A stretch of DNA of 64,000 nt, taken from NCBI GenBank assembly GCA_044892525.1, contig CM097885.1, forward strand, positions 134,106,001-134,170,000, written 5' to 3'. The notes below the pieces were generated by a model. That model was not told the origin of the DNA and searched no databases. It worked only from the letters and a program-made list of their open reading frames with translations. Below are positions 25,949 to 48,940 of this stretch, one piece after another (the first letter of the stretch is position 1; each line of letters opens with the position of its first letter). The stretch is from Schmidtea polychroa (Eukaryota). Made by a program: the position numbers and the translations under genes.

Positions 25949-26191
25949 CCCTTAAATGCATGATTTTTTAATTTGACCGCCAAAGTGCGTATTCGAAAAT
26001 GCTGCGCCAAGCTGTCAAATTTTGACAATTGAAAAAGTTAACTGCCATATTGTGACAGCTTGCGTTCAGAAACTAAGATAAATATTTTTAGCACCTAATA
26101 AAAGCAAAAAATACTGTATTTGAGTTACCGTTTAGAAATTATTTAAGGACAAATACACTGATGTATAAATACATCATCATGCATTTAAGGG
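25949..26191. mobile_element. piggyBac-type MITE (243 bp)
   Basis: TTAA on both sides (25945-25948, 26192-26195) and a perfect 15-bp TIR CCCTTAAATGCATGA. Confidence 0.9.
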
Positions 26192-27477: not shown

Positions 27478-28756
27478 TTATCTCTTTTTCAAACATATAA
27501 AGATAGTGATAGTTATATATGTTACTGACAGGATGAGATAACCTGTTATCAGAATGTAAATGAGGTATTCACATATGTTGACTGTTAAATCCAAATTTGT
27601 TCGTATCAGTCTATTTGTGTTGATAAAAGGTTTTGTCGTTCTACCCGATGGTAGTTCGAAAGATATTAAAAGTGTATGTGATGTTCGCTTCGGTTCGATG
27701 ATTGTTTTGACTTCCACGAGAATTATTTGCCATCGGTCTAGTTCGGTCATCCACTGCTGATATTTAACTCTTATCTCCCACTCCGTCACTAAATCAGAAG
27801 TATAAAGTGTAAAAAAATGATTAACGGCATCTAATATAGTCAGGATTCTCTGTTTGTTGTTAATGATAACTCTTTCGTCAAGTCCTGATTTTCTATATAT
27901 TGTTACCGATCCATTTCCAACACTCAAGGTTGCACGATCGGGCTTGTTTCTGAGATAGATGGACTGGGTCTCACTTTTAAACTGTGACCATAGGTTTTTC
28001 GTTACCGTTCCATTTTCGAAGCATAGGTTCTCGTAACAATTTGCACTAATTGTATAATTCTGATTCATTTCCAATTAATCATATCGGACAAATGATTTTC
28101 GTGAGTTGAGGGTGTCGACATTTACACTCTGAAATGTGATTCGCACTTTNNNNNNNNNNNNNNNNNNNNNNNNNNNNNNNNNNNNNNNNNNNNNNNNNNN
28201 NNNNNNNNNNNNNNNNNNNNNNNNNNNNNNNNNNNNNNNNNNNNNNNNNNNNNNNNNNNNNNNNNNNNNNNNNNNNNNNNNNNNTTTCGATTAAGTCCCG
28301 TATCTCTTTCGTTTGCACTTCTATAGGAATTTGCGTGTACCATTTTGACATGTTTTGTCTCAACAACCATTGGTATTAAAAATTTGGCTTTAGCTTTCGT
28401 GTTGCGAACATATCTTTATCGTAATTGAGTTCCACGAATGATGTAGTAGTGTCCAGTAAATTGATGATTTCTATTTGTTCTGTAATCTGGCATCTACAAA
28501 TCCATACAATATTTGTTAGGGTGGAATATATATTGATTTTTTATATAGCCTGGATCTGGTTTACCGGATATGGCAATTCAATCTTTTTCTCCCTCGCATT
28601 TGTTAATAACATCAGCATTGTTGTCACATATAATATTTTGCTGATGTAGCTGACTGGTGTTGGATTTTTTGTAAATTGCTGTTTCAATTTTGTTTGGCCA
28701 GATACTTTATTTTGCTTTGACCTTAAGAGATATCTGGATTCATCTTCCTCTGCCAC
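27478..28756 (-). pseudogene. env-like type I membrane protein (disrupted)
   Basis: Hydrophobic leader (ILYVTTMLMLLTNA), several Cys and N-x-S/T sites, C-terminal TM YLIYILITGYLILSVTYITITIFICL then KKR*. In-frame stops, one frameshift and an N gap. Confidence 0.55.
28150..28284. other. Assembly gap
   Basis: Run of N. Confidence 1.
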
Positions 28757-31700
28757 TAATTAACATCGATTTATTGTTCGATTCATCGATGATTCTACAG
28801 GATTACAAATTTTCACAAATATGACTGACTCAGGATATTGTGTCTTGTTCAAGTTTGAATGCTTAAACTATTTCCAAATTTTACTTTAATGGCCTCTTTA
28901 TTGGGGTAGTTTTTAGTTTGTGCTATTTATACTCATGACTCTATACCGAACTATAAACCGGCTTCCGGAGACACATACATCATCAAACAGATTTTTCGTG
29001 GGTGTCCACTCTTGTTTCCTTATGTGATTGGATCTTACTTAGATTCTCGTCATAATTACTATTATCCAAAGTAATTTTCAAATATTTTTGGGCAGAAATT
29101 CGCCCTGCTTCTCGATTTCTCAACTTTAGTTTTAGTTTCCAGTCATAACTGACATCATTCATACCACTCTGATTTTCAGTTTTATTTAATCTATATTAGA
29201 CTTCGGTGCCAATAATTTAATATAATTCTCCTTACCCTTATTTCTAGCTCTATTTAGTTCATCAATATTTGGAGTTATACATCTAAATTTTGGATAGGGA
29301 TCCACCTTTATTTTCAAGTCAAATTTTATCTATTCTAGCTTCTCTGTTCAACACAATCTTTCTTAAGTTTTGAGCAGGGATCCGGCCTTGTTTTCATTAA
29401 CCTTTTTTCTTACATTAATCACCGATATTTAAAGTTAACTTTCTAAATTTATTTTGAGCAGGGACATACCCTTATTCTTAGGTTTTCTTGCATTCGCCTT
29501 AGATTTTTTAGTGAGAAGTTCGTAATATTCTCTGATGTTGTTACGTTGTTACTCGCCTCACATAGCCCATTGGAAATTAGTGTTGAGTACTTAGTGTCCT
29601 ATAGTAAAGAATAAAAGTCGCAATATAAGAGTGAATGTTAAGTATATTGTCGAATTGCACTGAGTCAATTACCATTAATGAATATGAAATGTTGCTCTAC
29701 CCATACGGCCCACTGGACATTAGTGTGACGAGCTCTTATTGTTATACAATTGTATAATAAGACTTTGGAACTATCAACAAACTGAAAAGTTTTGACTCAG
29801 TTCCCGATATCTCTTCAATTATTTGATCCAGATATTGGAATTTTATTTTATATTTTCCAGGGCTTCCTTGTTCTGATTCTTGATTTTTCTCTTTTCGAAT
29901 TACTTGGTCAAAATTTTCCGAATACCACTCATTTTTTCGACGATATTCCTCAATCTCTTTGACTAATGCCCAGAAGTTGTTGATATTTTTGAAATACGAC
30001 GTCATGTATTTCGCTAACTCCACTGCTTATCTTCGTTGATTTCTTGCGTCTGATCTTAAAATTTCAATGAGTCCTTGACATTTACTATTATCTGTCGTCT
30101 TCTTTTCAATTCATATCAGTAGGACCTAGTTCATGTCTTTGAAGCGCATATATTCTTCACATTTCCGTTACATTTTCTGTGGTATCATCTTCGTAAGGTA
30201 GTGGGTCATCTTGGAGTTCTAATGCACCCTCATCTGTTTCTTAAATGATATTCTCCTCAAAGACCCCTTCTTTCATCTTCCATTTATTTTTTACTTCGTT
30301 CCAGATTCCTTACCATGATTTTTGTTTGCATTCTCTGGTATCAAACCACTGTTGGTGGATTCATATAATCTTCTTTGGTTTTAGGTAAGCTCCTTTCTGG
30401 GCTTCCTTCAATTTTTTACGTTGAGAGTATCTATTTGTTGATGCTTCATCTGCCGGCATGATTTTTTCGTTTGCTCGACATTCCATATACCTAATTCGCT
30501 TAAATAGGTATTTTCATCCATTGTAAGATGTGTTTATTGTATATCATAACAACATTTTCTAAATTTCCATCTTTGCTATTTGCTCGAGCTTTTCTATTAT
30601 TGTCTCGTTTATCATTTTCATTAGCTCATTGACTTGGTATTGATTTGTTATTGCAAGGACGTCTTGTTCTTCAGTGGGTAATCCTATAGTTACTATAGAT
30701 CTCCTTACTTTTTCATCATCAGCCTCCAGTATCTTTTGGTCAACCTGGTAATTTTATAGTTACCAAGTCTCATTATTTATGTGTCTCTGATATCGCTTAT
30801 GCACTCTTTCATTTTTATTGGCTTCTTATTGATTAACAAATCCCAAATACTCTCTATTTGATCTTCAATTTGGTGAATTAGTTTCTTTTGATTTCTTTTC
30901 ATGATATGTTTATCTCATTTTTCAGATAAGCATTTAGGTTGAAGTCATATTCTGCTTTGGTGCCCTTTACCTACTTGCGACTCGTTATTAGCGTCTTGTT
31001 CTTCGTTATTGTTAGTATCTTGTGTTCCCCGTGCCATATTAAAGCATTTTCTAGATGTATATTCGGTTTTATTCGCCAACCTCCTTGATATTTTAAGTAA
31101 TTTAATTGTTTGTTGATTAGTGGCTTTTCTCCATATGGTATAATACCACCTTCCATATTTTCTAACTTTAGCAACCCTTGCAAATATCGCTAAATCGAGG
31201 CTTGTTCTATGAATTTCATATTTCGCACAATGAGAGTGATCGTTTCTATGATATTCCGTATGAGTTCATCTTTATCTTGTACTAATTCGACTTCCGTTTC
31301 TTCATTTTCATTTTCCTTTTCGTCTTTATTTCTTGTATAGTTTGTTCATCGCTTTCTGGCCTTTATAACATTTCTCCTGCGAGACTACTTATATGACTTT
31401 TTCCATCTTCGGACGAACTTGACGTTTGAATAATAATAGAGTGAACGAGTTTGCTTTATGTTAGTAGTCAGGGTTAGCGATGTAGGTCAACAATCTAAAC
31501 CCCACACGATTAATCGGGATGTTCGATAACCCTATTGTTAGGTGACCACAGATGATACATGAAGTAGGTAAACAGCCACAGCTCTACATTTTGAATAAAT
31601 TTTAGATAACCAACTAGCATTAAAATTTTTAACATTTAAATTTAAAACATTCGAAAATAAATATTTAAAAATTCATATATATTAACTTCAATTTAAATTA

Positions 31701-31894
31701 GAAAATGTTTATTTCATTTTATCTCTGTTCATTTTTTAGAAATTCAATCTTAAATTTATATAATATTATTCAGTTAGATCATTATTATATGAAAAAACAG
31801 GAAATTAATTGGTATTCTACAATAAATGTTGATTAAAATTATTTATTGTTTTTGTTTAAATTTTGATAAATTATTTTACTAAATACAATATAAA

Positions 31895-32250
31895 ATGTCT
31901 TACATATGTTCGTATTGCAAAACTGGTATTATGAACACACCAGAGCAATACCAGACCCACATTAATGGATCAAAGCACAAGAAGAAAGCATTTCAACTAC
32001 AAGCTCCAGATAGTGGAATTGAATATGATGAATTTAAACCACATAAAACTGTAAGAAATGCTGCACCTTTCCAGCAGAAAATTGAAGATTTTCCTACTTT
32101 AACAAATGAAACGTAATCACTTATTATTTATGAATATTTTACCTATTTTAAAATAGGTTTTCGAATGGAACTAACGTTTTGGCATATTCAAATATTAGAA
32201 ATAATTTGTCTTCTGGAAACAGACCAATTGTTGTGTATGAAGAACCTGTT
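31895..32250 (+). CDS. Exons 31895-32112 and 32157-32250 encoding a matrin/JAZ-type (U1-like) C2H2 zinc finger
   Basis: CSYCKTGIMNTPEQYQTHINGSKHKKK fits C-x2-C-x13-H-x5-H followed by a basic tail. A 44-nt GT-AG intron keeps the frame. Possible further small exons at 32480-32507 and 32687-32770. Linkage to the downstream ADAD-like exons is unresolved. Confidence 0.75.
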
Positions 32251-34071
32251 GTAAGAATTGCTTTATAACATTTAAAATTTTAAATATATTTTTTAAAATT
32301 TAATTTCCACTTTTATTAAAAATACACTATAACGGCGCCATTAAGGGTACAAAGAGCAATACGAGATAAACCGGAGTTTTAACCGACTAAATATTTATTG
32401 TATCCTTTCTTATAGTTAATCATTTTTAATTCAAGGAACATTTTAAAAACCTTTAGAATAACATTTGACTTTATTTTAGCGTTTTCTCGAGAGTGACTCA
32501 ATTACAGGTTATGTGTTACTTGAACTTGATTCTTAGTTTTGAATAAATCAACAGCATAGGATTTCCCGTGACAGAAAATTTAATTAATTTTCTTACAAGT
32601 CTTATTTGATCTAAAAACAAAGAAGTGATTTGTTAAATTTATATTAAAAACAAGCATATTTAATATCATAATAATATACATTTTAGAACATATTATTGAG
32701 AGTTTAGGTACTTTTGTGCTGTCCAATTTTAGCACTAGAATGCAACAATTTTTTCGTTATCTTGATTCAAGTAAAAACATTATATACAGTTTATTGGCTT
32801 TTAAATTATCAATTTATCAAAGAACATTTTATTATAAATCTCGTTAGTAAAATGTATATATATATATATATTTAAATTTTAATTAATTATTACACAATCA
32901 CGGGATGTTTCTAATTTATCACTTGTTTTTATAAATATTTGTACGACAAATTTTTGTTAATTTAGAAGTTTCTAAATCATGCCCCTTAAACTCTCTTGTT
33001 TAAGCATTGGCTTTAGTAAATATTTTCACTGGATAAGTCAATTATAATTTCTTGCTCTGTCTAAGATGACTCGGACGTTCCCATAACCGTTTTAATTTCC
33101 GACTTGACTTTGTTTTTCAAAATAATTTGGTGGAAGCTGCAAATCAACGCGTAATTCTGAAATTGTGAATAAATGATTTTCTGGAACATTAATAATCTAA
33201 AATTATTTTAGTTGGTTAATTCCACTATTTTTATCCCTTAACTTCTCTACCTGAAACAATAGTATTTTGTTGATTGAAGTCATAAGCATTTTCGTTTCGA
33301 AATAATTCCTTTTTTCACATGTTTCTCGATATTTTTCGGTTCTGTCGGGTTTTATAAATAATCTGATTTCTAGTATTCATTATTTTAACGACTAAACTAA
33401 GCATTAAAATCTGATAAAGGAAATTATGTGCAGTTTTAAAAAACCTTAAGTTTTCAATTAATTTGATTTTTATATTTTAACATCAAATATAGCTCCATAT
33501 TATTTGTTATATATGTTTATCTTCAATATTTTCGTTTCTAGTTAAATTAATTACATTTTTATTAATTTTACGCGACCACAACAGAATTTTTACAGATTTG
33601 TCAATATCTGCATAAATCAAAAATTGATAATTAAAGTTCATAAGGTAAAACGCCAAAAGTGTCAATTGATTATTAAAACACTTTTCTTTAATATTGCTTT
33701 TATATTTAATTTTATAAATTGTACAAGTAATTAATTTTAAATATTTAATTTATTAATAATTAATTTTACACATGGCAAATAATAATGCAAGTAATTTAAT
33801 ATTAAATCCCTTAGGTTTTTGGGAAGTTTTAATAATATAATTGGATCTAGTTTCTTTTTCAGAATCAAAAGGGTTTAATTAAAAAATAAATTATTTAAGT
33901 TAAAAGAAAAATTTATTAAATCTTTAGTTTCTTCTACCCTACTTGATGATGGTAAGGTGTCGAAATATCTCGCAAAACGGAAGTTTGCGAGACGCTTCTT
34001 ATTTTAATAACTTAAAATTTTTTATTATTTACATAATTAATAATTTCTATTATTTACCTATTATTAAATAG

Positions 34072-37000
34072 CATCATGAAGATTGTTTTGAGGAAGATGA
34101 ATTTCGTACAGTAGACGAAGTATTTTACAACGAAAATTCTAAAATTGAATCGGCTAGATATATTGTTAGTAGTTATTTAAAAAATCAAAAAACTGCAGCT
34201 CAAGCTCTTAATGAAATAGCCAAAGCAATGGTATGGGAATTAGACTTTGAACCTGTTCATTCTAAAACTTTACGATATGCAATGGCGGTTTTAATCAGTG
34301 GTAATGAATTTGCTGTTGGTGAAGGAGAAAATAAGAAAGATGCCAAACAAAATGCAGCAGCAGAAGCTATTAGTGAAATAAAAATAAGGCTTAAAAGACA
34401 AAATAGGAACGGCCATGTACCAAATAATACCACTAAAACAAAACAAGCGAATCATAGTTCTGATGAATCACCAGCTGATAGTTATCGAAAGATTGCTATT
34501 ACAAAATATGAAGAGTTACGGGAGAGTTTTCGAAGAACATGTTCAATGCCTAAAAGGTTTTATCGCATTTTGTTTGCTATTCATCATATATAATCAAATC
34601 AACTCAGATACGCTGCATTTATAATAACGGAAAGGTTTGATCAGCACGCAAAAGAAGGTTCAGTTGTTGCTTTCGGTGCTGGCAAAGGAGTTGGAAAATA
34701 TGATAATTTAGCAGAAAATCGGGTAAATATTTACGTTTTAAATACTTTTTTTAACATAAAGATATAACTTCGAAGGCAAATTATCTAAAGCAAATAACCT
34801 CAAATATTTCATTCTTAAAATGTTCCATAAATTTTTCAAAAATCAATTTTGACATTTAAACATTCAGATTATCACTTATTTTCGGTGTTTGGATCAATAA
34901 ATGACGTTTAATTATTATTTTAGTTCGTGAATTTACGCTTCATATAAATTTATGGTTGCTAACTGTAATTGTGTGATTGGATACATGCCATCCAATCAGA
35001 TTCAAATGACCATTTTAGCATAGACAAAAGATAAAATTGTTTCGGGTCCGGTCAAAAGGCATCAAATGATTTTCGTGGTGACGATATGGAAGGTTATTTG
35101 AGTTACCTTAGTGTCACGCGACATTAAGGCATGCTGTCAATGGCGTAGCTAGAAATTTTGGGCCCCTATGCAATGAGTCATAGATGGGCCCCCTATACTG
35201 CATACACAAGTGAAATAGGTGCGGAGCACCATAGCGTCACAGCGAAAAAATTGAATTAGACCAGGTTTTCCCAAACTTTTCCTGCGATGGAACACTTCGT
35301 AACTCTCGAAATTTTGATGGGACACCTTGTTTATTTTGTACGGTATGAGACCAGTGGCGTAGGCCTACCCAAGATTTTTTAAGGGGAGGGGAAAGTGTTA
35401 ATTGAAAGAAGGGCTTATAGTTACAGAGGAGTGTTGCGTCGGAGGCAAAAAATTTTTCTGGGTCCTATTTGGAAAGACGATTTAATTAAATAATTTGAGC
35501 TCAATATACAATATAACAGTATAAATCGTTATAAAATGATAGTAATGTATGAGGGACAAATGTGTAAAGCCGACAAGCGAAACAATTTTTTCGACTCCTA
35601 TATGAATGGGTGATTTACTTAGATAACTAAAGTTGCTTGCTTATACAGTATATTATTAGCGAGGGAGAGACAGAGGGGATTGCATAAATAGGTATAATGC
35701 AGGTAAATAATGTACTCAATGCAATATCTAAACAAAACAGTGAAGCTTTATTACATAAAACCACAAATCGATCATTTGGAGGTCCCTGTTGACTGGTGCC
35801 GACCGTACCGTTGTTTTACATTGTTTTCTGAAGAAAATTAAAGAAACTTGTAAAATGCCCCCCCCCCCCCTGTCTTGTGGGCCCCTATGCATTGCTTACT
35901 CTTGCTATATGGTAACTACGCCACTGCATGCTGTATCATATAGTTCAGTGACATTTTTTTAAACGATTTCAAAATTTTAGGGCACACGAAAGTTTCTATA
36001 ATACACGTTTGTGTGTGCATCAGTGAATATGACTCACCATTTATGAGAAAATGAAGTTATTTACTTCATTTATTCAATTTTATAAATAGTTTTTATAAGT
36101 AAGTTTTTTAAATTTAAATAACTTTTAAGGCTTGAATTTTGATTTTATATAATTATGAGATCATTTCGCGTCACAGTGGTTGAGAATCACTGATATTGTT
36201 GAATAACTCACTTACAATTCACTACATTTTTTGTATTTGATTAGTAATCGTTTGTTTTGACTTTATACTAACAGCTTAAATATCAGAATAGGCTTACTCG
36301 AGTCAGCTTTCGGTTTATCATTTTTCGGTTTTATGAAGAATAGATATGTATAAGAAAACATTTTTTTTATAATTTTATCGTAAACAGTTAAAGAGTGCAC
36401 GTATTTCTAATTTATTTTGTCAAGTTATTATTATTATTATTATTATTATTGGTTAAAATGTAAGTTTAAATTCCTGTTTCTACATTTCCAATATGGATTT
36501 CCCGAAAAACAAATATATAGAATAAGTCAAGCAAAAGTCTTGAAACCGGAGTTCGTTTAATAATATCTAGTGAAAAGTTTGATTTTCCAAATCTAATTGC
36601 CGGGTCACACTACCAAAAAAGCCTTCATTTATATATTTAAAATAAAATGGCTTTATTAATTATCTTTTTTCCTCTGTTCCAAAGCATGGCAACTTTATTT
36701 TTTAAAGATGATTGTTAGAAATTAAGTAACCATTTTCCGCCAATTTAAACGTTTGCGCACATATGGGATAAGTATTACCGTATTTTAGCGCATATAACGC
36801 GCGCGTTATACGCATTTTTACAAACCGTGCACCCCCCATGCGCGGTATCTGTGGGTGCGCGCTTTATGATTTATATTTTACACGTGGCGGCATTGCCAGT
36901 GGAAATATTTTTATGATGTGACAGTAACCCTACCATCGGTTTTATTGTTTATTGTAATCAGATACCGCGCGCGTTATATGCGCTAAAATACGGTAAACTC

Positions 37001-40000
37001 CCTGATTGAATATATGAAGAGATAAAGTAAGTTTAATATGCTTTGAAAGTTGTAATTTTTACATCAATTTAATATTTTGAATTCATTAACAATTATCCCA
37101 TATTTATTTTTCAACATAAATCGGTCAAAGCACGTAGTATGTTTGTTAGTCAATCTCAAACGCCGGTTGGATTGTGTTCGGATCTCGTTTATCAATTCAC
37201 ATGTAATTGGTGTAATGCCACATACATTCCCGTCATCTGTGTACTCGAGTTCAAGAACACTGTCGACTGAAGGGAGTGTCCAATATTAAGGATCATAATA
37301 AAGTCTGTATGAGAGGATTAGGAATGTTGGATTTTAAAATCTTATTAAAAAATTTTGATAATTGTTTTGAGAGTGTGATATGTGAAACATTATTGATAAG
37401 AACTTAGAATCCTAAAATCAATGTGCAGTATGCAGTGAATACGTGTGTTGAATGGTTTTAATTAGGTTTTTGTTTGTTGATGTATATTGAATAATAGTTC
37501 TGTTAAATAATTAAAATAATATTTTTTAAAGAGATTTAAAAGTGAAAAATAATTGTTTGTTGAAAATTATTTTTGAAAATAATTATTTAAAATTGTTATT
37601 TATAATTTAAAAATTTATAGATTTTATAATTTGTTTATTAATTATCAATATTTTATAGCTATTCATCTCTAGTTAATGTATGTAACCTGATGATGATAGT
37701 GATGCTATCGAAATATATTCTGAAAAAGATGTACGAATGGCGATTTATATTTATTTTATTGTTCATAATTAATTTGTAAACATGCATTTTATGTGATTTC
37801 AGATAAAATTTTTATTAATAAAACTTATTATTTTCAGGGATATTTTGTAAAAAACTTTGATGCTCTTATAATAGCAAAGCGATCTCTTCAATGTTTCTTT
37901 TATAATCAAATTTTGCTTTTACTTGACAAAAAACGGTCAAATCTTAAAGGAGAGAAAATATATTTCGAAGTGGCCAAAAATGGATATATTACTTTAAGAC
38001 ACGGCTGTCGTTTACATTTATATATGAGCCATGCTCCAAAAGGTGACTGTGTCGAATCAATTCCTCGAGATTGGGAAGTATGAAATTATTATATCTTTTT
38101 GTATAAATTTTTAAAATTACATAAATAATTTTCATCCGGGGGTCACATATGGAAAAGTTACATCTTGAGAGTCACGGCAACTTTTCTGTAGCTACGATGC
38201 AGTCAAAATTAAGAAATATAAAAAAACAAATTAAATTCAATACTTAGATTACGCCCAAATATATATATATATATATATATTATTAAGCAAAAATTAAATC
38301 GATATTGATATAATAAATTGATATAATAAATGATATTTGAATAATAATAATAATTCTAATACTATTAAGAATTTAATGAAAATATTAAATGTAAAACTAT
38401 CATTATATATTTTCGAAGTTATCTACTAAAACTAATTACTTCAATGTCGAGTAATGTGGCGCTCAGTCTTCGTCTAGTGACAGATTTATAGAATTTATAA
38501 TTAATTTAATACTTTAATTATTAGAAAAGCCACATGAACATCACTTATACATTCCAAAATGAATTTGTCCTCATTATTTATTACTTATTTTTCTAAAAAT
38601 TTGAAATTCTTAATTTTATATATATATAATTTTTTTCACATAATAAAACAATTACGTATCGAAAGTACACATGCATTTTTATTGTGTTTGTGTTCAATTT
38701 AGTTCTTCTACAACTTTATTCTATTACATTTTCTATAATTTTAAAAAAATCAATAAATTTTATCTTACGTGTTGTTTTGCACTGTTTAGCTCGCTGATTG
38801 AGTAGTAGTCGCAAACTTTTCGTCATGTTATACAGGGGAGTCCATTGTTTGTTGAAAATTTTGTTTCGAGCGAAAACACCTTCATTATAGAATTTAACTT
38901 GGTCAGAAAAATAACTTCCCTCGCAAAATTCCTATAAAAATAAAGACTTTTGTTATTAAGGTTTGTTATTAAAAATTCTTTTAAAATAATGAATTATTAA
39001 GTTATTTTTTATTCATAAATTTTCTTTCAATTACTAATAAATAATAAACTTATTTAATTCATTTTCAGTTAAAAATTATACCTAAAATTCAAGCATTTAT
39101 TAATATAATTTTTATTAAAATATAATCGATTAATTATATAAAATCTATACATCAAAATTACTTTTAATTAAATAAATATTACAATATATAAGAACTTTTT
39201 TTGACTTTTACCTCATATTTCTTTTCATTTTCAATTGAAATTATATTAAATAAAAAATTGACTATAAAGATATCGATGTTTTTTTATATCTTTACAGATT
39301 CATTGTCTATTTTTTGATAAAAATAATGTCAACTATTACAATGTAAAATGACTTGATTAACAGGCCTTATAAATCAATTTTAGGAGTGTAGTGTGTCAAT
39401 CCAACACGCTAGAAAAATGTTATCGAGTGAAATCAGTTGTATAAGTTTACACCTGTTTACATAATAACATCTATATTATTAAATAAATATACCAAACTTC
39501 CTCGTGTGTTGATTTTTAATGTTGCACAAAAAACATTATTTAGACCATTAACGCCCAAAAGAAAACTGCAAGTAAAAAAATCTTTATTTATTATGACATT
39601 GGGTAAATTAGAACATTTATAACAAAAAAATATGGAGAAAATCACATTTTTTCGTAGACTTACTAGTGCCGTCTATTGTTGAAATGGGTAATCATTATAG
39701 AAAAACATGAAATCACGCCTTTAACAAGTGTACCTATGTGAGTACATTAGGTTGGTAATTGGTTAATATAGAATTTAGAAAGTGGTAGAAAAAATAACAC
39801 ACAACATATAATAAAGAATGCATGCAATCTTCGATGTGTAAATGTTGTATGAAGAAACAAATAAAAATTTAGAATTTAATTCTAAAAACTCCAATCTTAC
39901 TATTTGGGTTGTCGAGAAAATTCATTTTAAACGGTAATTATGAAGACCACAAAGTTCATTTAGCTATATAATTTACTAATATGGAGATAAATTTATAAGT

Positions 40001-43000
40001 CAATATAAAAAAAATTAAACACTATTTTATTAATATTCGCCAATTTTGCCAAAAATGGATAAATAAAAAGAAAATGTATGGCCAATAATATAAAAACCGT
40101 TAAAATTATTCAAACTTGAAATGCTAAAATATTGGTTTGCACACAAATTTTTATTATACAGTGCATTGTCATAAGTAGATGGATGCACGAGAAAAATTAT
40201 AATTGTTAACGCCCATGAAAAAGAACGAGTCTTATCCATGAAAAACGATTATATTTCTCTCATATCTGGTAGTTTTTGTTCCCATTCCTTATGAAGGGTG
40301 ACCAAAAGACTTGCAGCTGATGTTGGCTTGCATTGTGGCTTTCTTAAGAGAGAGCATACATTTTCAATGGGATTCCTCTCTGGTGATTGTGTACTCTATT
40401 TGAGGCAGGAAATTCCATGTTCCTATAACCAGGTCTTTGTTGATCATGCAATGTATTAAGGTGCATAAAATATGAATGTTCTCTTCATATGTTACCGTTC
40501 TCATAGATGGGAAGAAGGGTCTCATGAAGTATTTGACGGTAAACTGGAGATGACAGAATTTTGATTTTCCATTGAACCAAATAGCTACACACACCATGAC
40601 AGAGATGCTGCGTTTTTCAGTGGATTGGGGACAAGTGTTATGGTGTTCTTGATCCGGACGACGCCACACTCAAACACGACCATTGTTGCAGAACTGCTGC
40701 AAGGAACTCTCATCACTAAAGATAACACGTTTCCAAAAGTAATGAGACTTTTTTCGATTGGTAATATTCATGAGTGTCAGAATTGGCTTTCGTCTTGTAA
40801 GCTCTGCCATTGTATCCCAAACTCTTCAAATAACGCATTTCAGTAGACACAGATATAGAAGTTTCTTTCGCTATATGGTAGCTGTTGTACAATGACTTCA
40901 TCTCACAGGCTGAACAATACGCTCAGATGGTTTTGGTCGTCCACTATGAGGGTTGACACTGGATTTTCCTGAATTACGAAATTCACACAATATTGTTCAC
41001 TGTCGACATGCAAAGTAGCCGCAATATTTCTTTGTGATCTTCCGGACTCACATTGGCCAATAATTCGACCTCTTAAAACACCTGATAGTTCACTGGTACC
41101 TGGAATGCGTGGCATGATTAAAACAAGTGTGAAAACACGTGGAAATGAGCTCTGTTATATAGGCAATGGGAAGCTACTAATCAATCATAATTAGGCTTCT
41201 CACAACGACTAACGATAGGATGATGCAAATTTTGAACTTTATTTTAGTTCTTTCAATGTGATGTTATTGATGATTTTAAGGATATTTTCTATTTTATGGG
41301 GTGTCCATTTACTTATGACAATAATCTGTAGATGTTAATATTCCATGAATCCAGGTGTATACGATTTCGTAAACGATGCACATACACATTTTCAATATGT
41401 AATAACATGTAAAATTTTCTTTTATAATTATTTGAAAGGTTGTGAGAAATGGTTGAATGTATTTTTGAAGACCTTATTTTGATTTTTCGAAGAAATAGGT
41501 TTACCTCTATCTTAGAAGATGATTAGTTATACATAAAAGTTCGGTTTGATATTTAATTTACAAATATATAAAATTAACTCAAAATAAGAATCGACGAATT
41601 CTAATAAAATTAGAAATATTTGGACATTAATTTGTAATAAAAATATTTTTAGTTTAAACCGTAATAAATTCATAAACAATTTTTTGAAAAATAATGTTAT
41701 GAATAAAAGTAGATATAATAAATTTAAAACAAATAAAATTGTCGATAATAATTAGCATTGAATAGCTCAATGGAATCAAAATACAATCACTAATTTGCAT
41801 TTTAAAGTTAATTAGCTGAGCCATTTCTAAAATAGCTTTTAAAAGTTTCTCATTATTTTTCTATTGAATGTTGTGGAATTATATAGTAAAAGTGCAACTA
41901 CTATTAAATTTGATGGTTTTCTCGTTTAAAAAGACGCATAATAATAATTTTGATGCCACTAGTAAGACATTTTTAATAAATTTTTTATAGTATAAATTAT
42001 TTATTATTTTGTTACATAAGCGGTTTTAAGATATTACAGCGCCTTTATGTTGTCATGCCTGAAAATGTTAGTTTGTTATTCAAACTAAACAGACGACTAA
42101 ATTTAACATTTTGTATATTTTCTCAGGAACCCTTAAGATTGCCAGTTAAAGAAATTGAACGTGATAGATGTGGTATCATGGATCCTATAATGTATATGAG
42201 TTACAGTCAAAATGCACTTTTGAAGGAACCGGGACATATTAGGGTGTTACGTCCCGATTCAGATGATGAATGGATCAGCTTAGTCTCTTTCCGAGTGAAA
42301 AATAAATTAAATCGAAATGTTACAATGTCTCCCACTGATAAACTAATGAGCTGGATTCATCTGGGAATACAGGGTGCATTATTATCTCATTTAATGAACC
42401 CCGTTTATTTGTACAGTATTCAAGTACTTAATGACATTTTTTAAATGGTTTTCTAATAGAATATTAGTTTGGTAAAGATTATATGCATGAACACATTTCA
42501 AGAGCTCTCTTATGCAGAGTGCCTCTTGAAAATATTATTAGTAATAGAGGTCCTTATTATGATACTATAAAATATTTCGATCCATATATTGAACGTGTAA
42601 CTGAAATGGATTCGGATCAAATCAAGTCTGATATTTATGAGAACCCCAAGTAAGTCTTAACTTTGCTAAATTTCATTATTGATTACATATTTAAATAAGC
42701 GCATTTAAAACCCGAAGATTATAAACATTTTATTTAACAATAATTCTCAAGGATTTCTAATGAAATTAAAGATATATCCATATTTTAGTATCATATATTT
42801 ATATCCAGTGCCTTCTTGAATTAAAAATAGCGTTTATTTAATAGGGTAAAAATGAAAATTTTTCTAAATTGTAATTGAATTGACCATGAATCATTGTGTT
42901 AAAATTGTAATTTTGAGTGAAAATCACCTATTTTGAGGTGACCTTGAATGTCTTTATTATTTACAGATAAAAGAACTGTTTTTCAAAGTTTTAGTTTTGC

Positions 43001-46000
43001 TAACAATTATTGTATTTCTCGAATTAGCCAGGAATTGTGTAATACCCTAATAAGTCATATATGTAAGTTTGTTCTTAATCAAAATTTAATGTAGAACAAC
43101 GTGAATCTAGTAGTTTTAGCATAACATTAACAGGTTTCATGGAAATTTTCTCAAAAATATGATAAACAAATTTCTGTGAGCTGTAAACACAAATACACAT
43201 ATTTGCGTGATACATTATGGCCTAGTGTATACCTTTGTCACTCCGTTTGTTTCCTCTAATTAAGCAAAAACGATGAGTTCTATACGAAACCATGTAAAAT
43301 CAAAAAATAATAATTTAGAAATAAAAATATGCGCTGTTATACTATCTAGGCTGGTTTGTATACAAGGAAAAGGTGGCAAAGAAATATACATATTAAAAGT
43401 TTTACAGTTAAGAAAAATTTATTTTATCACAAATTTAATTTTATATATTTTAATTTATTTTTTTACATTTGGTTTTGATCAATTAAAATTATATACATAA
43501 AATTAATTAAAGTTTTTAAATATAAATCTCAATTTTAAAAAGTTACAAATTCAATGGTCACAATTCTAAAATTTCTCAATAGAATTGTAATTATTAGATA
43601 TTGCTATCATTGGTTTGTGCTAAATTAATTCAATATCAAATCGCTATGTGAAATATATTCAAATGTGTAAATGACTAAATTGGAAATTTGGATGACTATT
43701 TCAATTATACACATTTGCATATCAATTTTATAAAATTATTCTATAAATAATATGACTACTTTTTTTTCGAATCACTTATTGATTTATAATAAAGTTTTTC
43801 ATTTTCAGTTCTATTTTTAGAATGACTAAATTAAAGGATGGTTTAAATTCGAAAATAAAACAAATTTTTAACTTTAACTTTAACATTTCCAGAAAATAAA
43901 ATTGTATAAATTGTAGCTATTTAATTGCTAAATATATTAATAGTAATTAATTAAAATTATTTATTTTTACTATATTGTTGGTGAAATTACACAGAACAAC
44001 GATCGATTTATAATTCAAAAATATTAGATTTTCAAATTTTTTCAAAAATATTTTCATCTCCACTGTGTAAAAAAATTCAGTTTTGGTGGCCCCTGTAATC
44101 ACATTTTATAAATATCAAATGTCCGAAGCACAGTTGATGTCGTTTCAAACCGTACCGGTATCCGCCGCAGGTTTCCTATTTGAGCAGCAAATAGATACGG
44201 GGAGTTGACAAATTAAATCTGTAAAAGGTTTGGGTCCATGAACCGAATATGATGGTCTTAATTAAGAAATGATTTTAAATTGAGATGGATTTTTGATATG
44301 AATAATGACCGAATTTTTGTCGTGATTTTCTTGTACACTTAAAGGTGAACTCAGAACTAACATAAAATTAATTAAGGATAAGAGTTTATTTATTTCTTAA
44401 GCCTAATATTACTCACCTATTTAAAAAAGATATTTAATTACTAATAACCTAATTGGTTTATTCCCTTATTCTCTCAGAATCAGCATCAATTGGTATATGA
44501 ATCCTGTTACCGAATTACCTGAAGTTATTGATGTTAGAACTGGTTGTGTCCATCATAGTTCTCCATATGAATTACCTGGTGGAGATGTAAGCAACAAATG
44601 TTCTCGTCTATCAAAAGTTTGCATGTTACTCAGATTAAAAGAATCTATTAATGCTGCAATTGATTATTTTGCAATGCGTCCTGAATACCAAAGAACAAGT
44701 AAACTTGCATTAATGTGAAAATATTTAAAAGATAATTCATAATTCTATAAAAACGCAAAATAATAAAAAAAGAATGTTTTTACAAAAACTATTTACCAGT
44801 ATCTAATTACTATGAACAATATTAGAATCTGCTGATCATATCCTTCCAAATCGAGATCTTATTTAAAACTAGGTATAAAACAATGAAAAAGATCTTTAAA
44901 TTTTTTTTTTATTTATCTCGCGTTGATCCAAAATGCAAATTACCCAAATTCAGCAAAATCATTTACTTTGTTCATCTTTTATCCGCTTTTTTATTTATTC
45001 TCATTGTGATTTTGACTATGTTTTTCTCTAGACAAAAAACTCAATGAAGATAAATGAAAACAATATATACTTAGTAATTTATCACTACATTAAATTGTTA
45101 AAAATCGAGAAAAAAACAGTATCTCATTAAACCCAACCTAAATAGCTTATTTATTTTAGTTTCGATAAAAATATTTATATTCTTATTTGTTAAATGAAAT
45201 TATTTGTAAAAATAACATTTAATCAAAATTCAATTTTGTTGTTTGAAATGAAACAATTCATATTTTCTGTCATTATTTTTGCATTGATCAAAAACATTGT
45301 TGATTTGGTGGTTTCGAAACTGAAAGCTATTTTTAGCAAGTCATAATAGGGAAAAAATAATTTTATGCATTAAATTTACATTTGAAAATATCATATGATT
45401 CACGTTACGACTAAAAGATCCTTAGATTCGCATAGAAATCAAGTTATTGGAACCAAATTCTTTATTATCAACCAGGCAGATATGTAGAATTTATTTTTCC
45501 ATTAACATTAATGCACTTTTTTATCATTGATTTGAAAGCCGCTCGGGTCCTTTTCTGTCACAATAATTACCAGAAAGTTTGGTCCAATGCGATCCAATAT
45601 GAAAATGTTATTTTCACAATCAAAATTTCATTTATCCATTACCTCTTCCGTTATAAACCATTTGAACCATCATATAAACCATCAGAATTTCAAATTTTTT
45701 CAAAAATATTTTCATAATGATCCAACATATGCTGCTATGTTCTCTTTGAGGCAAATCCATTTTTGTTAATTGCCTATGCTTATATATGTATATTGAGTTT
45801 TTCATTAAATAAATATTAACATGGGCATTTCTGACTCCACATGTTCTCTAAAAACAATTAGATAAACAACACTCAACATACATTTGTAATCAAATTGGTA
45901 TTATCTACAATTTACAAAGCTCCGAATATCGCAATAAAATGTCCATTCTGACTATTCAACAAGTCTCACTGTAACCGCTTGGGTTTTGTAACAATAGTCA

Positions 46001-47093
46001 CCTCTTTTCTTTAGTTAATTTGATTCTTTTATTTTCTTTTCCGCTAATTCTATCTTCTAATTTTTCCTTTAATCCTACTGTCTATTTCTTCGTACATATC
46101 TGAGGCAAAATGCCGATTGTTTCTGAATTTGAGCTCCCTTATATAGTTGAAATAATGGCGTTTCAACTAGATCGTCTCCTTTGACAAGCTTTGCCTCGTG
46201 GCCTTATTCATCTTCGAAAGAAATAATTAATTGTCCCTCTTGTGATAATCTTTTCCAATTACTCGTGTTGTCATGACAACGGTTTCCCAGAATTCATGTT
46301 GTTTACTTTTCTTTCTGTTTTCAATATTCCTTTTTAATCATGGAAATTTTATAACTCCAACGTATAAATAACTTTATATGTGAGTCTAAGAACGTAGTTA
46401 CTAGATTATAGTATATTTAACACTCAGTGCCATGTCAGTCATTTTTGACTTTTTTAAAAATAAGCTGTCAGGTCAATGTTAAAAAGGACTGTTTTATCTG
46501 CACTGGACAATTAAATCGTATTATCAGTTAATTAAAATAACTTTGTGATACTTTATGGTATTAGTCATAAAGTTAAAATCGCTAACATGTGTAAACCAAA
46601 AAGTGAAAAAATACCTGTTATATTATTTCTTAAGCGTTATACTCGCAATTCTATAATTCGCAATTTTATAATATCCCGGGTTCGAGGTTTTGTGGGAGTT
46701 GGCAACCCTATGGGTATCACAAATCTTACGCTATTTAATTAAATAGAAGTTCATAATTTTTCGGTATCATTAATACAATTATTTTATTATAAATTAATAT
46801 AAATTTTGATTTTTAAAACTCCAATAATTATTGAAATCCTTTTTATTTTTATCTATTATTATCCAAATTTTCATCAAAGCAAGTGTTACTTTTAATTAAA
46901 TATTTCCACAGGATACTTGCAGGGGATTAAAGGAGCCTGTGGATATGATTACAATAGTTTTAAAACGTCTGCAGTGGCTTATCGGCGATTGAAGCAATGT
47001 TTGTTTGAATCTTTATTAAATAAGCATTATGGGGAATGGGTGCCAAATATTGAGAGAAACAAATTTAATCTCCTTGAACTCTATGATATCTAA
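34072..47093 (+). CDS. adad: ADAD-like (catalytically inactive ADAR-family) protein: dsRBD plus pseudo-deaminase. Exons 34072-34556, 34608-34722, 37838-38077, 42127-42423, 42468-42649, 44478-44698, 46912-47093; 5' end unresolved
   Basis: All seven exons join in phase at GT-AG. dsRBD: ALNEIAK..GEGENKKDAKQNAAAEAI. Deaminase landmarks: VVAFGAG, IIAKRSLQCFFYNQI, LHLYMSHAPKGD, MSPTDKL..LGIQGALLSHLMNPVY, SINW, SRLSK, YGEWV. CHAE, PCG and SCSDK are replaced by FDAL, PKG and SPTDK. Confidence 0.9.
35138..35926. mobile_element. hAT-type MITE containing nested hAT-like ends
   Basis: TIRs CAATGGCGTAGCTA / TAACTACGCCACTG, exact 8-bp TSD CATGCTGT (35130-35137, 35927-35934). Internal CCAGGTTTTCCCAAAC and CAGTGGCGTAGG termini. 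Confidence 0.85.
36778..36993. mobile_element. pogo-type MITE (216 bp)
   Basis: Perfect 28-bp TIR CCGTATTTTAGCGCATATAACGCGCGCG with TA on both sides; same CCGTA terminus class as the 11863 element. Confidence 0.92.
37100..37460 (+). mobile_element. Penelope-like element 3' fragment (GIY-YIG endonuclease)
   Basis: LVYQFTCNWCNATYI [small deletion] RHLCTRVQEH..IKDH..DFKIL..CETLLIR matches the PLE GIY-YIG pattern VY.F.C..C...YIG.T.R.L..RV.EH. Confidence 0.8.
37687..37720 (+). ncRNA. Degenerate minimal hammerhead ribozyme motif (Penelope type)
   Basis: CTGATGA-T-GATAG-TGATG-CTATC-GAAA-TATAT: intact core and perfect 5-bp helix II. Helix I cannot be paired. Confidence 0.5.
40159..41328 (-). mobile_element. 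Full-length but decayed Tc1-like element
   Basis: Imperfect ~30-bp TIRs (CAGTGCATTGTCATAAGTAGATGGA vs CAGATTATTGTCATAAGTAAATGGA) with TA flanks. HTH start MPRIPGTSELSGVLRGRIIGQCESGRSQRNIA, then WRRPDQE and ISVMVCVAIWFNG. Frameshifts. Confidence 0.85.
46421..46452. mobile_element. Isolated piggyBac-like terminus
   Basis: TTAA-CACTCAGTGCCATGTCAGTCATTTTTGACT resembles the TTAA-CACT..GGTCATTTTGACC end of the 54767 element; no partner end found. Confidence 0.35.
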
Positions 47094-48940
47094 AGATTAA
47101 TAACCAATCTTTTGTATGACAATAAATTAAATGTAAAATACCGTCAAATTTTGTAATAGATGTATTTTATTAGACTTTCGTTTTAATATTTGTTTCTTTT
47201 TGGTAATTGATTTTTGGTAAGCATGAAGACCATATCTAAACCCTGACACAGTTAGAATAGTTTGTTTACTTTCTTTTGATGCATGTTAACGGTTCAAAGA
47301 ATGCCTGCTATTTTCCTAGCATAATGTTATGCCTACTATCAATAAGAGTTTCGATATCTTAACTTGAACAACTATGATCGAATGTTATTGTAACAAATTT
47401 GGTCGACATCTTTCTTTGAAATCCCAATAGTATTCTTATAATATTTTTACAAGTCTTAAAAGTTCACTTTATTTTTCTGCTGAATTCATTTTTTACTCTA
47501 TGTATTATATAAACAGTGTATTAGAGGCTCTACTCTTTTTGCCTTCTTTATTTTTCACTCTCAGCTATTGGGAAAAATATTTTTGAACCGTTTTCAAAAT
47601 TTTGTGAGTAAAAGCTTTTCTAATTTCTATTAATCGCGTTTATTTCATCCTTAGAAAATATTTATCCTTTAAGATTCTCTTTTTGAATCATTCAAATTAA
47701 TCTTACTCTGTTTTTAATTTTAATGCTTTCTCGTTTTCCATATACAGTAAAACCCCACTAAAAAGTGCCCCCCCCCTATTAAAGGTACATGAAAATGAGG
47801 CGCATTTGTATTTTTACGGGACATACAGATACAAATAAGCATAAGACTATACAGTGTGCATCGATTTAAAGTACACAATTTTATTTATATAATTTTAAAA
47901 AATATTAATTATCTTAATAGAAAAAATATCAATATATTTTAAATATCTTATATTTTTTATAATCTTTAAAATTCTAATTAGAGGTTTATTAGTGAAATAT
48001 ATTTATAATAATATTAAAAAGTTAAATATTAAAACAATTAAGTTGCTTTAATATTAAGAAAATTATTTCATAATTAAATTTTTAAGAGCCCATATAAAAA
48101 TGGGGAATTGCAACAAACAGACAGTTTGTGAATTTTTAGAAGATAAAGGTTATAGAATATCTAGGAAGGAATAAAAGAGTAAGATAAACGACAATAAGTA
48201 AGGATGATAAGTTAGAAAAAGAGTCAAGAGAAATGTCAACCGTTAACTAATTGTAAAGCAATGCAAATGATTTCAAAACTTGTTATTTGTGCTAAAACCA
48301 AGGGATTAATTGCAGTTTAATGAGAAAGTATGAAAAGTGCATGACAAAAAGAAAAAGCAAACATAACTTGATGAATTCTTAATTAGAAATAATTGTCGTA
48401 TCCTTATTTTGAAACATATTATTTGCTAGAATTTTAAACTTTACGACATTTACCATATATAAGACCCTCAATTTTTAATGAATATCAAACTTTTTATTTT
48501 TCAATATTTCTATTATAAGTACACGTGCATCCGAAGAAGAATTGTTTGCAAAAGGGTGTACTTTATATGGAGGTTTTACTGTTTTTATTGTTTTGAAAAT
48601 TTTGTTTTGTTATTTTTTAAAAATAGATTTGATAGCCCGATTCGACAGGAATTTATTAATTAATTCTTTTATGTCAGTAAAATTAAAAAATTAATTTGTT
48701 AGTGTTTTCAAACCTTTAAGACAGGAGGAGGATTGCAGTTTCAAATTCCATTTAAAAACGCCAATTCAATTGAAAGCCACCAAAATGGGTGATTTATTTA
48801 TGGTAAGGTTGAAGTTTAACTGAAGATAGCTAAAGAAATTTAATTATTCCAAAAATCTATGAAATAAATCACCTGCAAAATTCAAAAATATAAGAAAATT
48901 TTATTGTAAAAATTTAAAAATGATGTTAAAATAGGTTTAA

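What the first reader, a model, noticed from the sequence alone, without database searches (positions are those of the whole stretch)
37838..47093. ADAR-family pseudo-enzyme with ADAD-type signature substitutions
Seen: the positions equivalent to ADAR2 H394/E396 (CHAE) read FDAL (37856-37867), C451 (PCG) reads PKG (38036-38044) and C516 (SCSDK) reads SPTDK (42328-42342). The fold landmarks and all seven exons remain in frame, so the gene looks maintained but cannot deaminate. Established: vertebrate ADAD1/ADAD2 have one dsRBD, an inactive deaminase with PKG, and are germ-granule proteins needed for spermatogenesis; ADAD1 also has an SSPF motif matching SSPY here. Inference: an invertebrate ADAD orthologue, a candidate germline or chromatoid-body dsRNA/piRNA factor, distinct from the active ADAR1/2.
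Basis: partly seen in the sequence, partly recalled or inferred. Interest (0 to 1): 0.7.

Follow-up and report, generated by a model that had tools for sequence, protein, structure and literature searches.

The report
Catalytically dead ADAR-family gene in a planarian
This is an intact, single-copy gene for an RNA-editing-enzyme look-alike that keeps its double-stranded-RNA-binding domain and fold but has lost all four catalytic residues, a kind of protein known in vertebrates, nematodes and molluscs but not yet described in flatworms.

Summary
Aligned to human ADAR2/ADAR1, H394/E396 (CHAE) read FDAL, C451 reads PKG and C516 reads SPTDK. Seven GT-AG exons (34072-47093) give one open frame encoding a dsRBD plus an ADAR-type deaminase domain. 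No alternative deaminase exon exists in the window, and the gene is single-copy. The genome's other family members (ADAR1-like, ADAR2-like, ADAT1-like) keep all catalytic residues.

Eight of 12 IP6-pocket ligands are kept while 0 of 4 catalytic residues are. So this looks like a maintained pseudo-enzyme, not a decaying copy.

The genome is a close relative of Schmidtea mediterranea. A published BLAST table for that species lists a fourth, undiscussed transcript (dd_Smed_v6_4276_0_1). Its statistics and length match this gene.

ADAD orthology is plausible but unresolved:
- For: the ML tree places it beside vertebrate ADADs (UFboot 81), and it shares PKG and an ADAD-specific loop motif (xG-x5-SP-aromatic).
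- Against: support falls to 64 without the catalytic columns, AU tests reject no alternative, and the histidine kept in all the vertebrate ADAD motif strings tallied is lost.

A germline role is untested. Verdict: new member of a known kind, moderate interest.

The parts
31895..32112 (+). Tentative first coding exon: ATG plus a U1/JAZ-type C2H2 zinc finger (C-x2-C-x12-H-x5-H), donor GT at 32113
   Evidence: Read. Pfam zf-U1 1.1e-3 and zf-C2H2_jaz 2.8e-3, both below the curated cut-offs. Single copy in the genome. The link to the downstream gene is inferred from phase compatibility and from the 505 nt lying 5' of the dsRBD match in dd_Smed_v6_4276_0_1. Not shown by reads.
32157..32250 (+). Tentative second exon (phase 2 in, phase 0 out), following a 44-nt intron
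   Evidence: Sequence reading only. It keeps the zinc-finger frame open and ends at GTAAGA. Unverified.
33928..33951 (+). Tentative micro-exon (FLLPYLMM), or an alternative start ATGATG at 33946-33951; donor GTAAGG
   Evidence: Exon A has no in-frame ATG before the dsRBD, so some upstream exon is required. Which one is used is not shown.
34072..34556 (+). Exon A: dsRBD (about 34207-34377) with an intact KKxAK motif (NKKDAKQNAAAEA), plus linker
   Evidence: Pfam dsrm 9.4e-9. AG acceptor, GT donor, phase 2. RNA-like runs hold 0.77-0.83 of its 31-mers.
34608..34722 (+). Exon B: start of the deaminase domain (..VVAFGAGKGVGKYDNLAENR), after a 51-nt intron
   Evidence: aligns to ADAR 'VVSxGTGxxC'.
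37838..38077 (+). Exon C: FDAL in place of CHAE (H394D, E396L); PKG in place of PCG (C451K)
42127..42423 (+). Exon D: degenerate flipping-loop region (no GEGTIP), SPTDK in place of SCSDK (C516P), conserved LGIQGALLSH
   Evidence: Single copy.
42468..42649 (+). Exon E (FGKDYMHEHISRALLCRV...), after a 44-nt intron; ends in phase 2
44478..44698 (+). Exon F: ISINW motif; lengthened loop with TGCVHHSSPY (SSPY 44557-44568); SRLSK (K629 kept)
   Evidence: (hmm 277-326).
46912..47093 (+). Exon G: C-terminal IP6-pocket helix (Y658, K662, Y668, K672, W687 kept); stop TAA 47091-47093
   Evidence: Pfam A_deamin 0.029; family HMM 5.7e-5; alignment.
47121..47126 (+). AATAAA, candidate polyadenylation signal 28 nt after the stop
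   Evidence: Sequence reading only.

Best explanation
The locus is a functional, single-copy, spliced gene of a Schmidtea-like planarian. It encodes a non-catalytic ADAR-family protein of about 575 aa, or about 685 aa if the upstream zinc-finger exons belong to it. The protein has one canonical dsRBD followed by a pseudo-deaminase domain. The domain cannot deaminate. All three zinc ligands are replaced (H394D, C451K, C516P), the proton-shuttle glutamate is replaced (E396L), and the GEG base-flipping loop is gone. It keeps most of the buried inositol-hexakisphosphate pocket, so the fold is probably preserved as a scaffold. The most likely mode of action (inferred) is dsRNA binding without editing. 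That could mean shielding or sorting structured RNAs, or modulating the two active planarian ADARs. Known parallels are ADAD1/2, C. elegans ADR-1, ADAR3 and squid ADAR/D-like. By architecture and several signature residues it is ADAD-like. Whether it descends from the same ancestral gene as vertebrate ADADs is open (about even odds).
For: Shown: domain content and substitutions. In-frame GT-AG exon chain. P(open frame by chance) about 2e-21, set against a terminal branch of 2.8 substitutions per site, which would have destroyed an unconstrained frame. No alternative deaminase-like exon anywhere in the 64 kb. Single copy. The other three family loci in the genome keep HAE/PCG/SCSDK. IP6 ligands from the hADAR2 list in PMC10278661 Table 1, read on the alignment: R401, K519, K629, Y658, K662, Y668, K672 and W687 are kept; R400K and S531A are conservative or common variants; only R522S and K690N are lost. 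That compares with 0 of 4 catalytic residues kept. dsRBD KKxAK motif is intact. Expression, indirect: four RNA-like runs from two studies hold 0.77-0.83 of the exon A-B 31-mers, close to the 0.87 expected if the 51-nt intron is spliced out. Bar Yaacov 2022 S1 Table lists dd_Smed_v6_4276_0_1 at 24.0% identity over 541 aa to hADAR2, nt 505-2079. My model gives 24.8% over 428 aa to macaque ADAR2. I estimate the same dsRBD-to-C-terminus length for my model (about 1581 nt against 1574). The four family loci here map one-to-one onto the four S. mediterranea transcripts in that table.
Against: No orthologue sequence was obtained, so dN/dS and conservation of the substitutions across species are untested. 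No structure could be predicted, because the spliced protein has no reference. Two IP6 ligands are lost, so IP6 binding is not certain. The functional mechanism is entirely inferred from analogy.
Confidence: 0.8

Rival explanations
1. True orthologue of the bilaterian ADAD clade. It would descend from the same inactive ancestor as vertebrate ADAD1/2 and mollusc ADAD-like genes, and act in germ cells or germ-granule-like RNPs.
For: The ML tree places it sister to 13 vertebrate ADADs, UFboot 81 / SH-aLRT 67. C451K gives PKG, the commonest ADAD state. E396 is replaced by an aliphatic residue, as in ADADs. The loop between INW and SRL is lengthened and carries xG-x5-SP-aromatic in the same register as 44 of 112 ADADs (56 of 112 for xG-x5-SP), against 0 of 50 ADAR/ADAT sequences and 0 of 3 own paralogues. 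Chance is about 0.3% for SP and 0.04% with the aromatic. These loop columns were not in the tree. One dsRBD plus one AD.
Against: Very long branch (2.8) next to a long ADAD stem (1.09), so long-branch attraction is a risk. Without the catalytic-motif columns the grouping weakens to 64/69 and absorbs a long-branched sponge pair. AU tests do not reject ADAR1 (p 0.33), ADAR2 (0.12), ADAT1 (0.23) or the own ADAR2-like gene (0.16). Subfamily HMM scores are ADAR1 136, ADAR2 130, ADAD 124, ADAT1 105 bits. H394, present in every complete vertebrate ADAD motif string tallied, is D here, and the motif reads PKGD rather than PxGA. Introns shared by shark ADAD2 and bird ADAR1 (HMM positions 91/92 and 301) are absent. 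No invertebrate ADAD was in my data set. One dsRBD is also the state reported for planarian ADAR1 and ADAR2. The probable S. mediterranea orthologue comes from a transcriptome the authors used with the asexual CIW4 strain, which argues against gonad-restricted expression.
Confidence: 0.4
2. Lineage-specific dead paralogue. A flatworm ADAR1- or ADAR2-like duplicate lost catalysis independently and converged on ADAD-like residues, as C. elegans ADR-1 did.
For: All four catalytic residues are lost, as reported for ADR-1 and unlike ADADs, which keep H394. AU tests allow grouping with ADAR1, ADAR2 or the own ADAR2-like gene. The highest subfamily HMM score is ADAR1. Planarian ADAR2 is itself too divergent to place (OWN_C1 is unresolved). 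Relaxed constraint at the same columns can mimic kinship.
Against: The free ML tree prefers ADAD. The SP-aromatic loop motif in the same register is hard to get by chance. There is no close paralogue in the genome. No exact shared intron with the own ADAR1- or ADAR2-like genes beyond a family-wide one.
Confidence: 0.4
3. Decaying, unexpressed pseudogene left from an ADAR duplication.
For: Extreme divergence (at most 30% identity to any family member). Loss of all catalytic residues. No read-level expression proof here.
Against: 575 codons are open across seven exons with all splice sites intact in 30%-GC DNA (p about 2e-21). Selective retention of IP6-pocket and dsRBD RNA-contact residues. RNA-like runs hold the exons. 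A matching assembled transcript exists in S. mediterranea.
Confidence: 0.03
4. Still an enzyme: an alternative exon, RNA editing of its own message, or an unconventional metal site restores activity.
For: Asp (at the H394 position) can be a zinc ligand in other enzymes.
Against: No second deaminase-like exon in any frame of the window, even at E<=50. K and P at the two cysteine positions cannot bind zinc. A-to-I recoding cannot turn AAA (K) or CCC (P) into a Cys codon (my reading of the codons). The proton shuttle and flipping loop are both missing.
Confidence: 0.02

Closest known systems
Vertebrate ADAD1 (TENR) and ADAD2
   Same: One dsRBD plus one inactive ADAR-type deaminase domain. E396 replaced by an aliphatic residue. 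C451K (PKG). C516 replaced. Lengthened loop with SP-aromatic in the same register. Nearest group in the free ML tree.
   Different: ADADs keep H394 (every complete motif string tallied) and read PxGA; here H394D and PKGD. Placement is not statistically secured. ADADs are testis-specific, and expression here is unknown. There may be an N-terminal U1/JAZ zinc finger, which none of the roughly 120 ADAD hits carries in its Pfam list.
Squid sqADAR/D-like and mollusc ADAD-like proteins (PMC10278661, PMC6651903, PMC9989829)
   Same: Spiralian, catalytically dead ADAR-family members (E396A, C451S, C516A in squid) whose assignment to ADAD versus ADAR is also ambiguous. The squid protein inhibits ADAR2 in vitro.
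   Different: The squid protein has two dsRBDs and keeps H394. No sequences of this group reached my data set, so kinship is untested.
C. elegans ADR-1
   Same: Every zinc ligand mutated. It acts as a dsRNA-binding partner and regulator of the active ADAR (as summarised in PMC7360552).
   Different: ADR-1 is reported to sit apart from other ADARs in published trees. It was not in my alignment, so no sequence-level link was tested.
Vertebrate ADAR3 (ADARB2)
   Same: A non-editing family member that competes for dsRNA.
   Different: ADAR3 keeps all catalytic residues and belongs to the ADAR2 clade with two dsRBDs and an R domain. The window protein does not.
Planarian ADAR1 and ADAR2 (Bar Yaacov 2022, PMC8797187)
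   Same: Same genus-level lineage, one dsRBD plus one deaminase domain. Probable counterparts are at C3:94.04 Mb and C1:42.7 Mb of this genome.
   Different: Those keep CHAE or SHAE, PCG and SCSDK and are active. That paper states planarians have two ADAR homologues and does not discuss the fourth BLAST hit.

Membership tests
ADAR family (dsRBD + A_deamin) | Adenosine-deaminase (editase) domain, Pfam PF02137 | tested here: met
   Exon C 5.9e-15, exon D 2e-13, exon G 0.029. The whole domain aligns end to end with ADAR1/2/ADAD.
ADAR family (dsRBD + A_deamin) | At least one dsRBD N-terminal to the deaminase domain | tested here: met
   Pfam dsrm 9.4e-9 at 34207-34377, same frame chain. KKxAK motif present.
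Active ADAR (ADAR1/ADAR2) | Zinc ligands H394, C451, C516 and proton shuttle E396 | tested here: not met
   D, K, P and L at these positions. Every set-1 ADAR/ADAT hit with the motif columns covered (all but P0069) keeps them.
Active ADAR (ADAR1/ADAR2) | Base-flipping loop (..SGEGTIP..) | tested here: not met
   Replaced by HIRVLRPDSDDEW with a deletion.
ADAD (ADAD1/ADAD2 clade) | One dsRBD plus one catalytically inactive deaminase domain | tested here: met
   The feature is also compatible with an independently inactivated planarian ADAR.
ADAD (ADAD1/ADAD2 clade) | Signature at the catalytic motifs: H394 kept, E396 aliphatic, P-x-G-A with x often K, C516 to A/D/G/E/S | tested here: inconclusive
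   E396L and PKG match. H394D, GD instead of GA, and C516P do not (about 120 vertebrate ADADs).
ADAD (ADAD1/ADAD2 clade) | Lengthened INW-SRL loop with xG-x5-SP(-aromatic) | tested here: met
   Window has TGCVHHSSPY. 56 of 112 ADADs carry xG-x5-SP (44 with the aromatic), against 0 of 50 ADAR/ADAT and 0 of 3 own paralogues.
ADAD (ADAD1/ADAD2 clade) | Monophyly with ADADs in a deaminase-domain tree | tested here: inconclusive
   UFboot 81 / SH-aLRT 67. 64/69 in a mixed group without the catalytic columns. AU tests reject no alternative.
ADAD (ADAD1/ADAD2 clade) | Germ-cell-specific expression and requirement for gametogenesis | not testable with these tools
No expression atlas was reachable. dd_Smed_v6_4276 was absent from the supplements I could search.
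ADAT1 (Tad1) | Deaminase domain alone, no dsRBD, catalytic residues intact | tested here: not met
   The dsRBD is present and the catalytic residues are lost. ADAT1 has the lowest subfamily HMM score (105 bits), although AU cannot reject the grouping (p 0.23). The genome has a separate ADAT1-like locus at C2:100.47 Mb.

The most novel reading that the evidence does not exclude
The upstream U1/JAZ-type (dsRNA-binding class) zinc finger at 31895-32112 is the true N-terminus. The protein would then be zinc finger - dsRBD - pseudo-deaminase. That architecture is not seen in any of the roughly 240 ADAR, ADAD and ADAT proteins fetched here. It would mark a flatworm-specific, non-editing dsRNA reader with two different dsRNA-binding modules. 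It could work with or against ADAR1/ADAR2 in the planarian dsRNA response or in neoblast RNP granules.
Probability: 0.35. Interest if true: 0.55.

Novelty: new member of a known kind. Interest (0 to 1): 0.4.

Why it matters
Inactive ADAR relatives recur across animals: ADAD1/2, ADAR3, ADR-1 and squid ADAR/D-like. What they do beyond 'bind dsRNA' is poorly understood, and mouse ADAD mutants are sterile without editing changes. Planarians are an RNAi-tractable spiralian in which ADAR1 and ADAR2 phenotypes and the dsRNA response are already characterised. The published inventory counts only two ADAR homologues. A third, dead member, already visible as an undiscussed BLAST hit in that paper's supplement, gives a direct handle on two questions. 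Do such pseudo-deaminases modulate editing, innate dsRNA sensing, or stem- and germ-cell RNPs? And is ADAD really a bilaterian-wide gene?

Tried and rejected
1. The search of protein representatives with exon C found one weak hit only: P0001, 36.8 bits, an active ADAT1-like gene on an AT-rich metagenome contig. No orthologue is in that library.

2. The search for homologous proteins with the genome's own ADAR2-like 259-aa exon found nothing.

No junction or expression evidence from reads followed. One local script did scan the six-frame translation of the whole window, those bases included, with a local HMM.

4. The spliced protein has no reference. I therefore left out full-length homology search, cluster look-up, AlphaFold, fold search and complex prediction rather than type the sequence.

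5. Intron positions were compared with shark ADAD2, bird ADAR1, cod ADARB2 and the three own paralogues. Only a family-wide intron (before 'EP..') and a near-match at 224-226 are shared. Apparent matches to the own ADAT1-like gene (1 nt off, different phase) and to the own ADAR2-like gene (2 codons off) are not exact. Uninformative.

6. Subfamily HMM scoring and dsRBD best hits do not discriminate.

7. ESM Atlas look-ups gave generic zf-JAZ/zf-met and dsRBD neighbours, all below 0.9.

8. Literature: no paper links ADAD to planarians or flatworms. dd_Smed_v6_4276 is absent from the held supplements of two further papers.

9. Rejected readings: an alternative catalytic exon and a multi-copy or transposon origin.

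The N runs at 16975-17223 and 28150-28284 were left untouched.
Full report
**Observation**

The window is AT-rich eukaryotic DNA (30% GC). Exon C (37838-38077) translates to GYFVKNFDALIIAKRSL...LYMSHAPKGDC. Exon D (42127-42423) translates to ...NRNVTMSPTDKLMSWIHLGIQGALLSH....

phmmer against PDB chains aligns NFDAL to DCHAE and APKGD to SPCGD of human ADAR2. It aligns MSPTDK to MSCSDK of ADAR1, ADAR2 and ADR-2.

Pfam gives A_deamin 5.9e-15 (exon C), 2e-13 (exon D) and 0.029 (exon G). It gives dsrm 9.4e-9 on an exon at 34072-34556.

**Gene model**

Seven exons join in one frame with GT-AG at every intron:
- 34072-34556
- 34608-34722
- 37838-38077
- 42127-42423
- 42468-42649
- 44478-44698
- 46912-47093

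The frame ends at TAA 47091-47093, and AATAAA lies 28 nt downstream. The finding's start (37838) is therefore the third of these exons.

Exon A has no in-frame ATG ahead of the dsRBD, so an upstream exon is needed. There are two candidates:
- ATGATG|GTAAGG at 33946-33951.
- A U1/JAZ-type zinc-finger ORF at 31895-32112 (C-x2-C-x12-H-x5-H). Its Pfam scores are zf-U1 1.1e-3 and zf-C2H2_jaz 2.8e-3, both below cut-off. It continues through 32157-32250 and a micro-exon at 33928-33951, all phase-compatible.

**Is it more than chance, and is it alive?**

- 575 open codons at this composition have p of about 2e-21.
- The protein sits on a terminal branch of 2.8 substitutions per site.
- An unconstrained sequence that diverged would not have kept seven exons open and all splice sites intact.

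A permissive six-frame HMM scan of the whole window (E<=50) finds only the model's own exons. There is no spare exon carrying HAE or PCG. Exon D and the zinc-finger exon are single-copy in the 781-Mb genome.

**Rest of the family in this genome**

PF02137 hits four further places, which make three genes:
- A C3 gene with CHAE/PCG/SCSDK, placed in the ADAR1 clade.
- A C1 gene with SHAE/PCG/SCSDK. It has a ~99.9% identical copy on C2 and is unplaced between ADAR1 and ADAR2.
- A C2 ADAT1-like gene.

Only the window's gene is dead.

**What is kept and what is lost**

I used the hADAR2 residue list in PMC10278661 Table 1 and the alignment.
- Catalytic centre: 0 of 4 residues kept. The SGEGTIP flipping loop is deleted.
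- IP6 pocket: R401, K519, K629, Y658, K662, Y668, K672 and W687 are kept. R400K and S531A are conservative or common variants. Only R522S and K690N are lost.
- The dsRBD has the RNA-contacting KKxAK motif.

This pattern fits a protein selected for fold and RNA binding, not for chemistry.

**Species and published context**

S. mediterranea primers from Bar Yaacov 2022 match this genome imperfectly. adar1_R1 matches 21 of 22 on the C3 gene. adar2_R2 matches 18 of 21 on the C1 gene. adar2_F2 has more than 3 mismatches. So this is a close relative, not S. mediterranea itself.

That paper states that planarians have two ADAR homologues, each with CHAE and one RBD. Its S1 Table of tBLASTn hits lists four transcripts: 8562 (adar1), 4538 (adar2), 9448, and dd_Smed_v6_4276_0_1. 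The last is 24.0% identical to hADAR2 over 541 aa, spanning nt 505-2079. It is never discussed.

My model is 24.8% identical to macaque ADAR2 over 428 aa, with 18 gaps and E 4e-22. Its dsRBD-to-C-terminus span is about 1581 nt by my estimate, against 1574 nt in that transcript. The four loci here map one-to-one onto the four transcripts. So 4276 is very probably the orthologue, and it is expressed.

The 505 nt upstream of the dsRBD match fit the zinc-finger model (456 nt coding plus about 49 nt of UTR). That is arithmetic, not proof.

In this species, four RNA-like runs from two studies hold 0.77-0.83 of the exon A-B 31-mers. The expected share is 0.87 if the 51-nt intron is spliced out. Another organism's RNA-like runs hold 5%, as a relative about 9% diverged would.

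**Is it an ADAD?**

Only exon-level references were available. I built a profile from P0001 plus window and paralogue exons (A2) and obtained 120 ADAR1, ADAR2, ADARB2 and ADAT1 proteins. From the one ADAD1-like hit I obtained about 120 vertebrate ADADs.

The ADAD signature from these sequences:
- H394 is kept in every complete motif string tallied.
- E396 is replaced by I, V, L, A, T or M.
- PCGD becomes P-[K/E/S/T]-G-A.
- C516 is replaced by A, D, G or E.

The window shares E396L and PKG. It does not share the kept histidine or the GA.

A 73-row, 364-column LG+C20 tree puts the window sister to ADADs at UFboot 81 / SH-aLRT 67. Long branches meet there.

Removing 41 catalytic-motif columns leaves a 64/69 group that also contains a long-branched sponge pair.

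AU tests do not reject the alternatives:

| Grouping tested | delta lnL | p |
|---|---|---|
| window + ADAR1 | 6.2 | 0.33 |
| window + ADAR2 | 6.0 | 0.12 |
| window + ADAT1 | 3.3 | 0.23 |
| window + own ADAR2-like | 7.1 | 0.16 |

Subfamily HMM scores are flat: ADAR1 136, ADAR2 130, ADAD 124, ADAT1 105 bits. Intron positions give no ADAD-specific match.

The best independent character is the loop between INW and SRL. These are insert columns and were not in the tree. ADADs have a longer loop:
- 56 of 112 carry xG-x5-SP, and 44 of those add an aromatic.
- 0 of 50 ADAR/ADAT sequences and 0 of 3 own paralogues do.
- The window has TGCVHHSSPY in that exact register. Chance is about 0.3% for SP, or 0.04% with the aromatic.

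Overall I put ADAD-clade orthology at about even odds.

**What is known**

ADAD-like genes outside vertebrates are published:
- Sponges and ctenophores, by architecture (PMC4323055).
- 14 lophotrochozoans (PMC6651903).
- Protostomes and deuterostomes, with ADAD sister to ADAR1 (PMC9989829).
- Squid ADAR/D-like, inactive, inhibits ADAR2 in vitro, equally hard to place (PMC10278661).
- Mouse ADAD1/2 are testis-specific, needed for fertility, and do not change editing (PMC7360552).

No paper in the library links ADAD to flatworms.

**Mechanism (inferred)**

The protein is a non-editing dsRNA binder. The dsRBD, and perhaps a dsRNA-type zinc finger, dock it on structured RNA. The IP6-stabilised pseudo-deaminase would serve as an interaction surface. 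Plausible outputs are competition with, or recruitment of, ADAR1 and ADAR2, or assembly of RNPs.

A germline or chromatoid-body role is possible but has no support here. The probable orthologue appears in the transcriptome the authors used with the asexual CIW4 strain. That speaks against strictly gonadal expression.

**Verdict**

The pseudo-enzyme reading is well supported. ADAD orthology is unresolved and the function is untested. It is a new flatworm member of a known kind, of moderate interest.

Noticed in passing
window 31895-32112 (+), continuing 32157-32250: ATG-initiated ORF with a U1/matrin/JAZ-type C2H2 zinc finger (CSYC-x12-H-x5-H), single copy in the genome. It lies 2 kb upstream of the dsRBD exon on the same strand and is phase-compatible with it. 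It could be the gene's N-terminus or a separate 72-aa product.
   Followed up: partly
G000 C1:42715475-42718627 (L011) versus C2:96537677-96540829 (L010): The ADAR2-like gene occurs twice, on two different chromosome-scale contigs, at ~99.9% identity where both copies align (97% of columns, gaps included), including introns and a 25-nt tandem repeat array. The two copies differ by three point differences (including one K/Q codon) and repeat-unit indels. This is either a very recent segmental duplication or an assembly duplication.
   Followed up: partly
Bar Yaacov 2022 (PMC8797187) S1 Table: The tBLASTn sheet lists two further S. mediterranea hits beyond adar1 and adar2: dd_Smed_v6_9448 (probably ADAT1) and dd_Smed_v6_4276_0_1 (probably this gene's orthologue). 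Neither is discussed in the paper.
   Followed up: partly
L017 (ENA metagenome contig ERZ27256358 k141_172184): The only library hit to exon C (P0001) is an active ADAT1-like gene on a 33%-GC eukaryote-like contig. Its neighbours are glycine- and serine-rich repeat proteins. It is an unidentified AT-rich microbial eukaryote, unrelated to the window's organism.
   Followed up: no
window 24000-32000: Strong negative AT skew (-0.15 to -0.23) over about 8 kb upstream of the gene, containing the N run at 28150-28284. It suggests a strand-biased repeat or element. I did not examine it.
   Followed up: no
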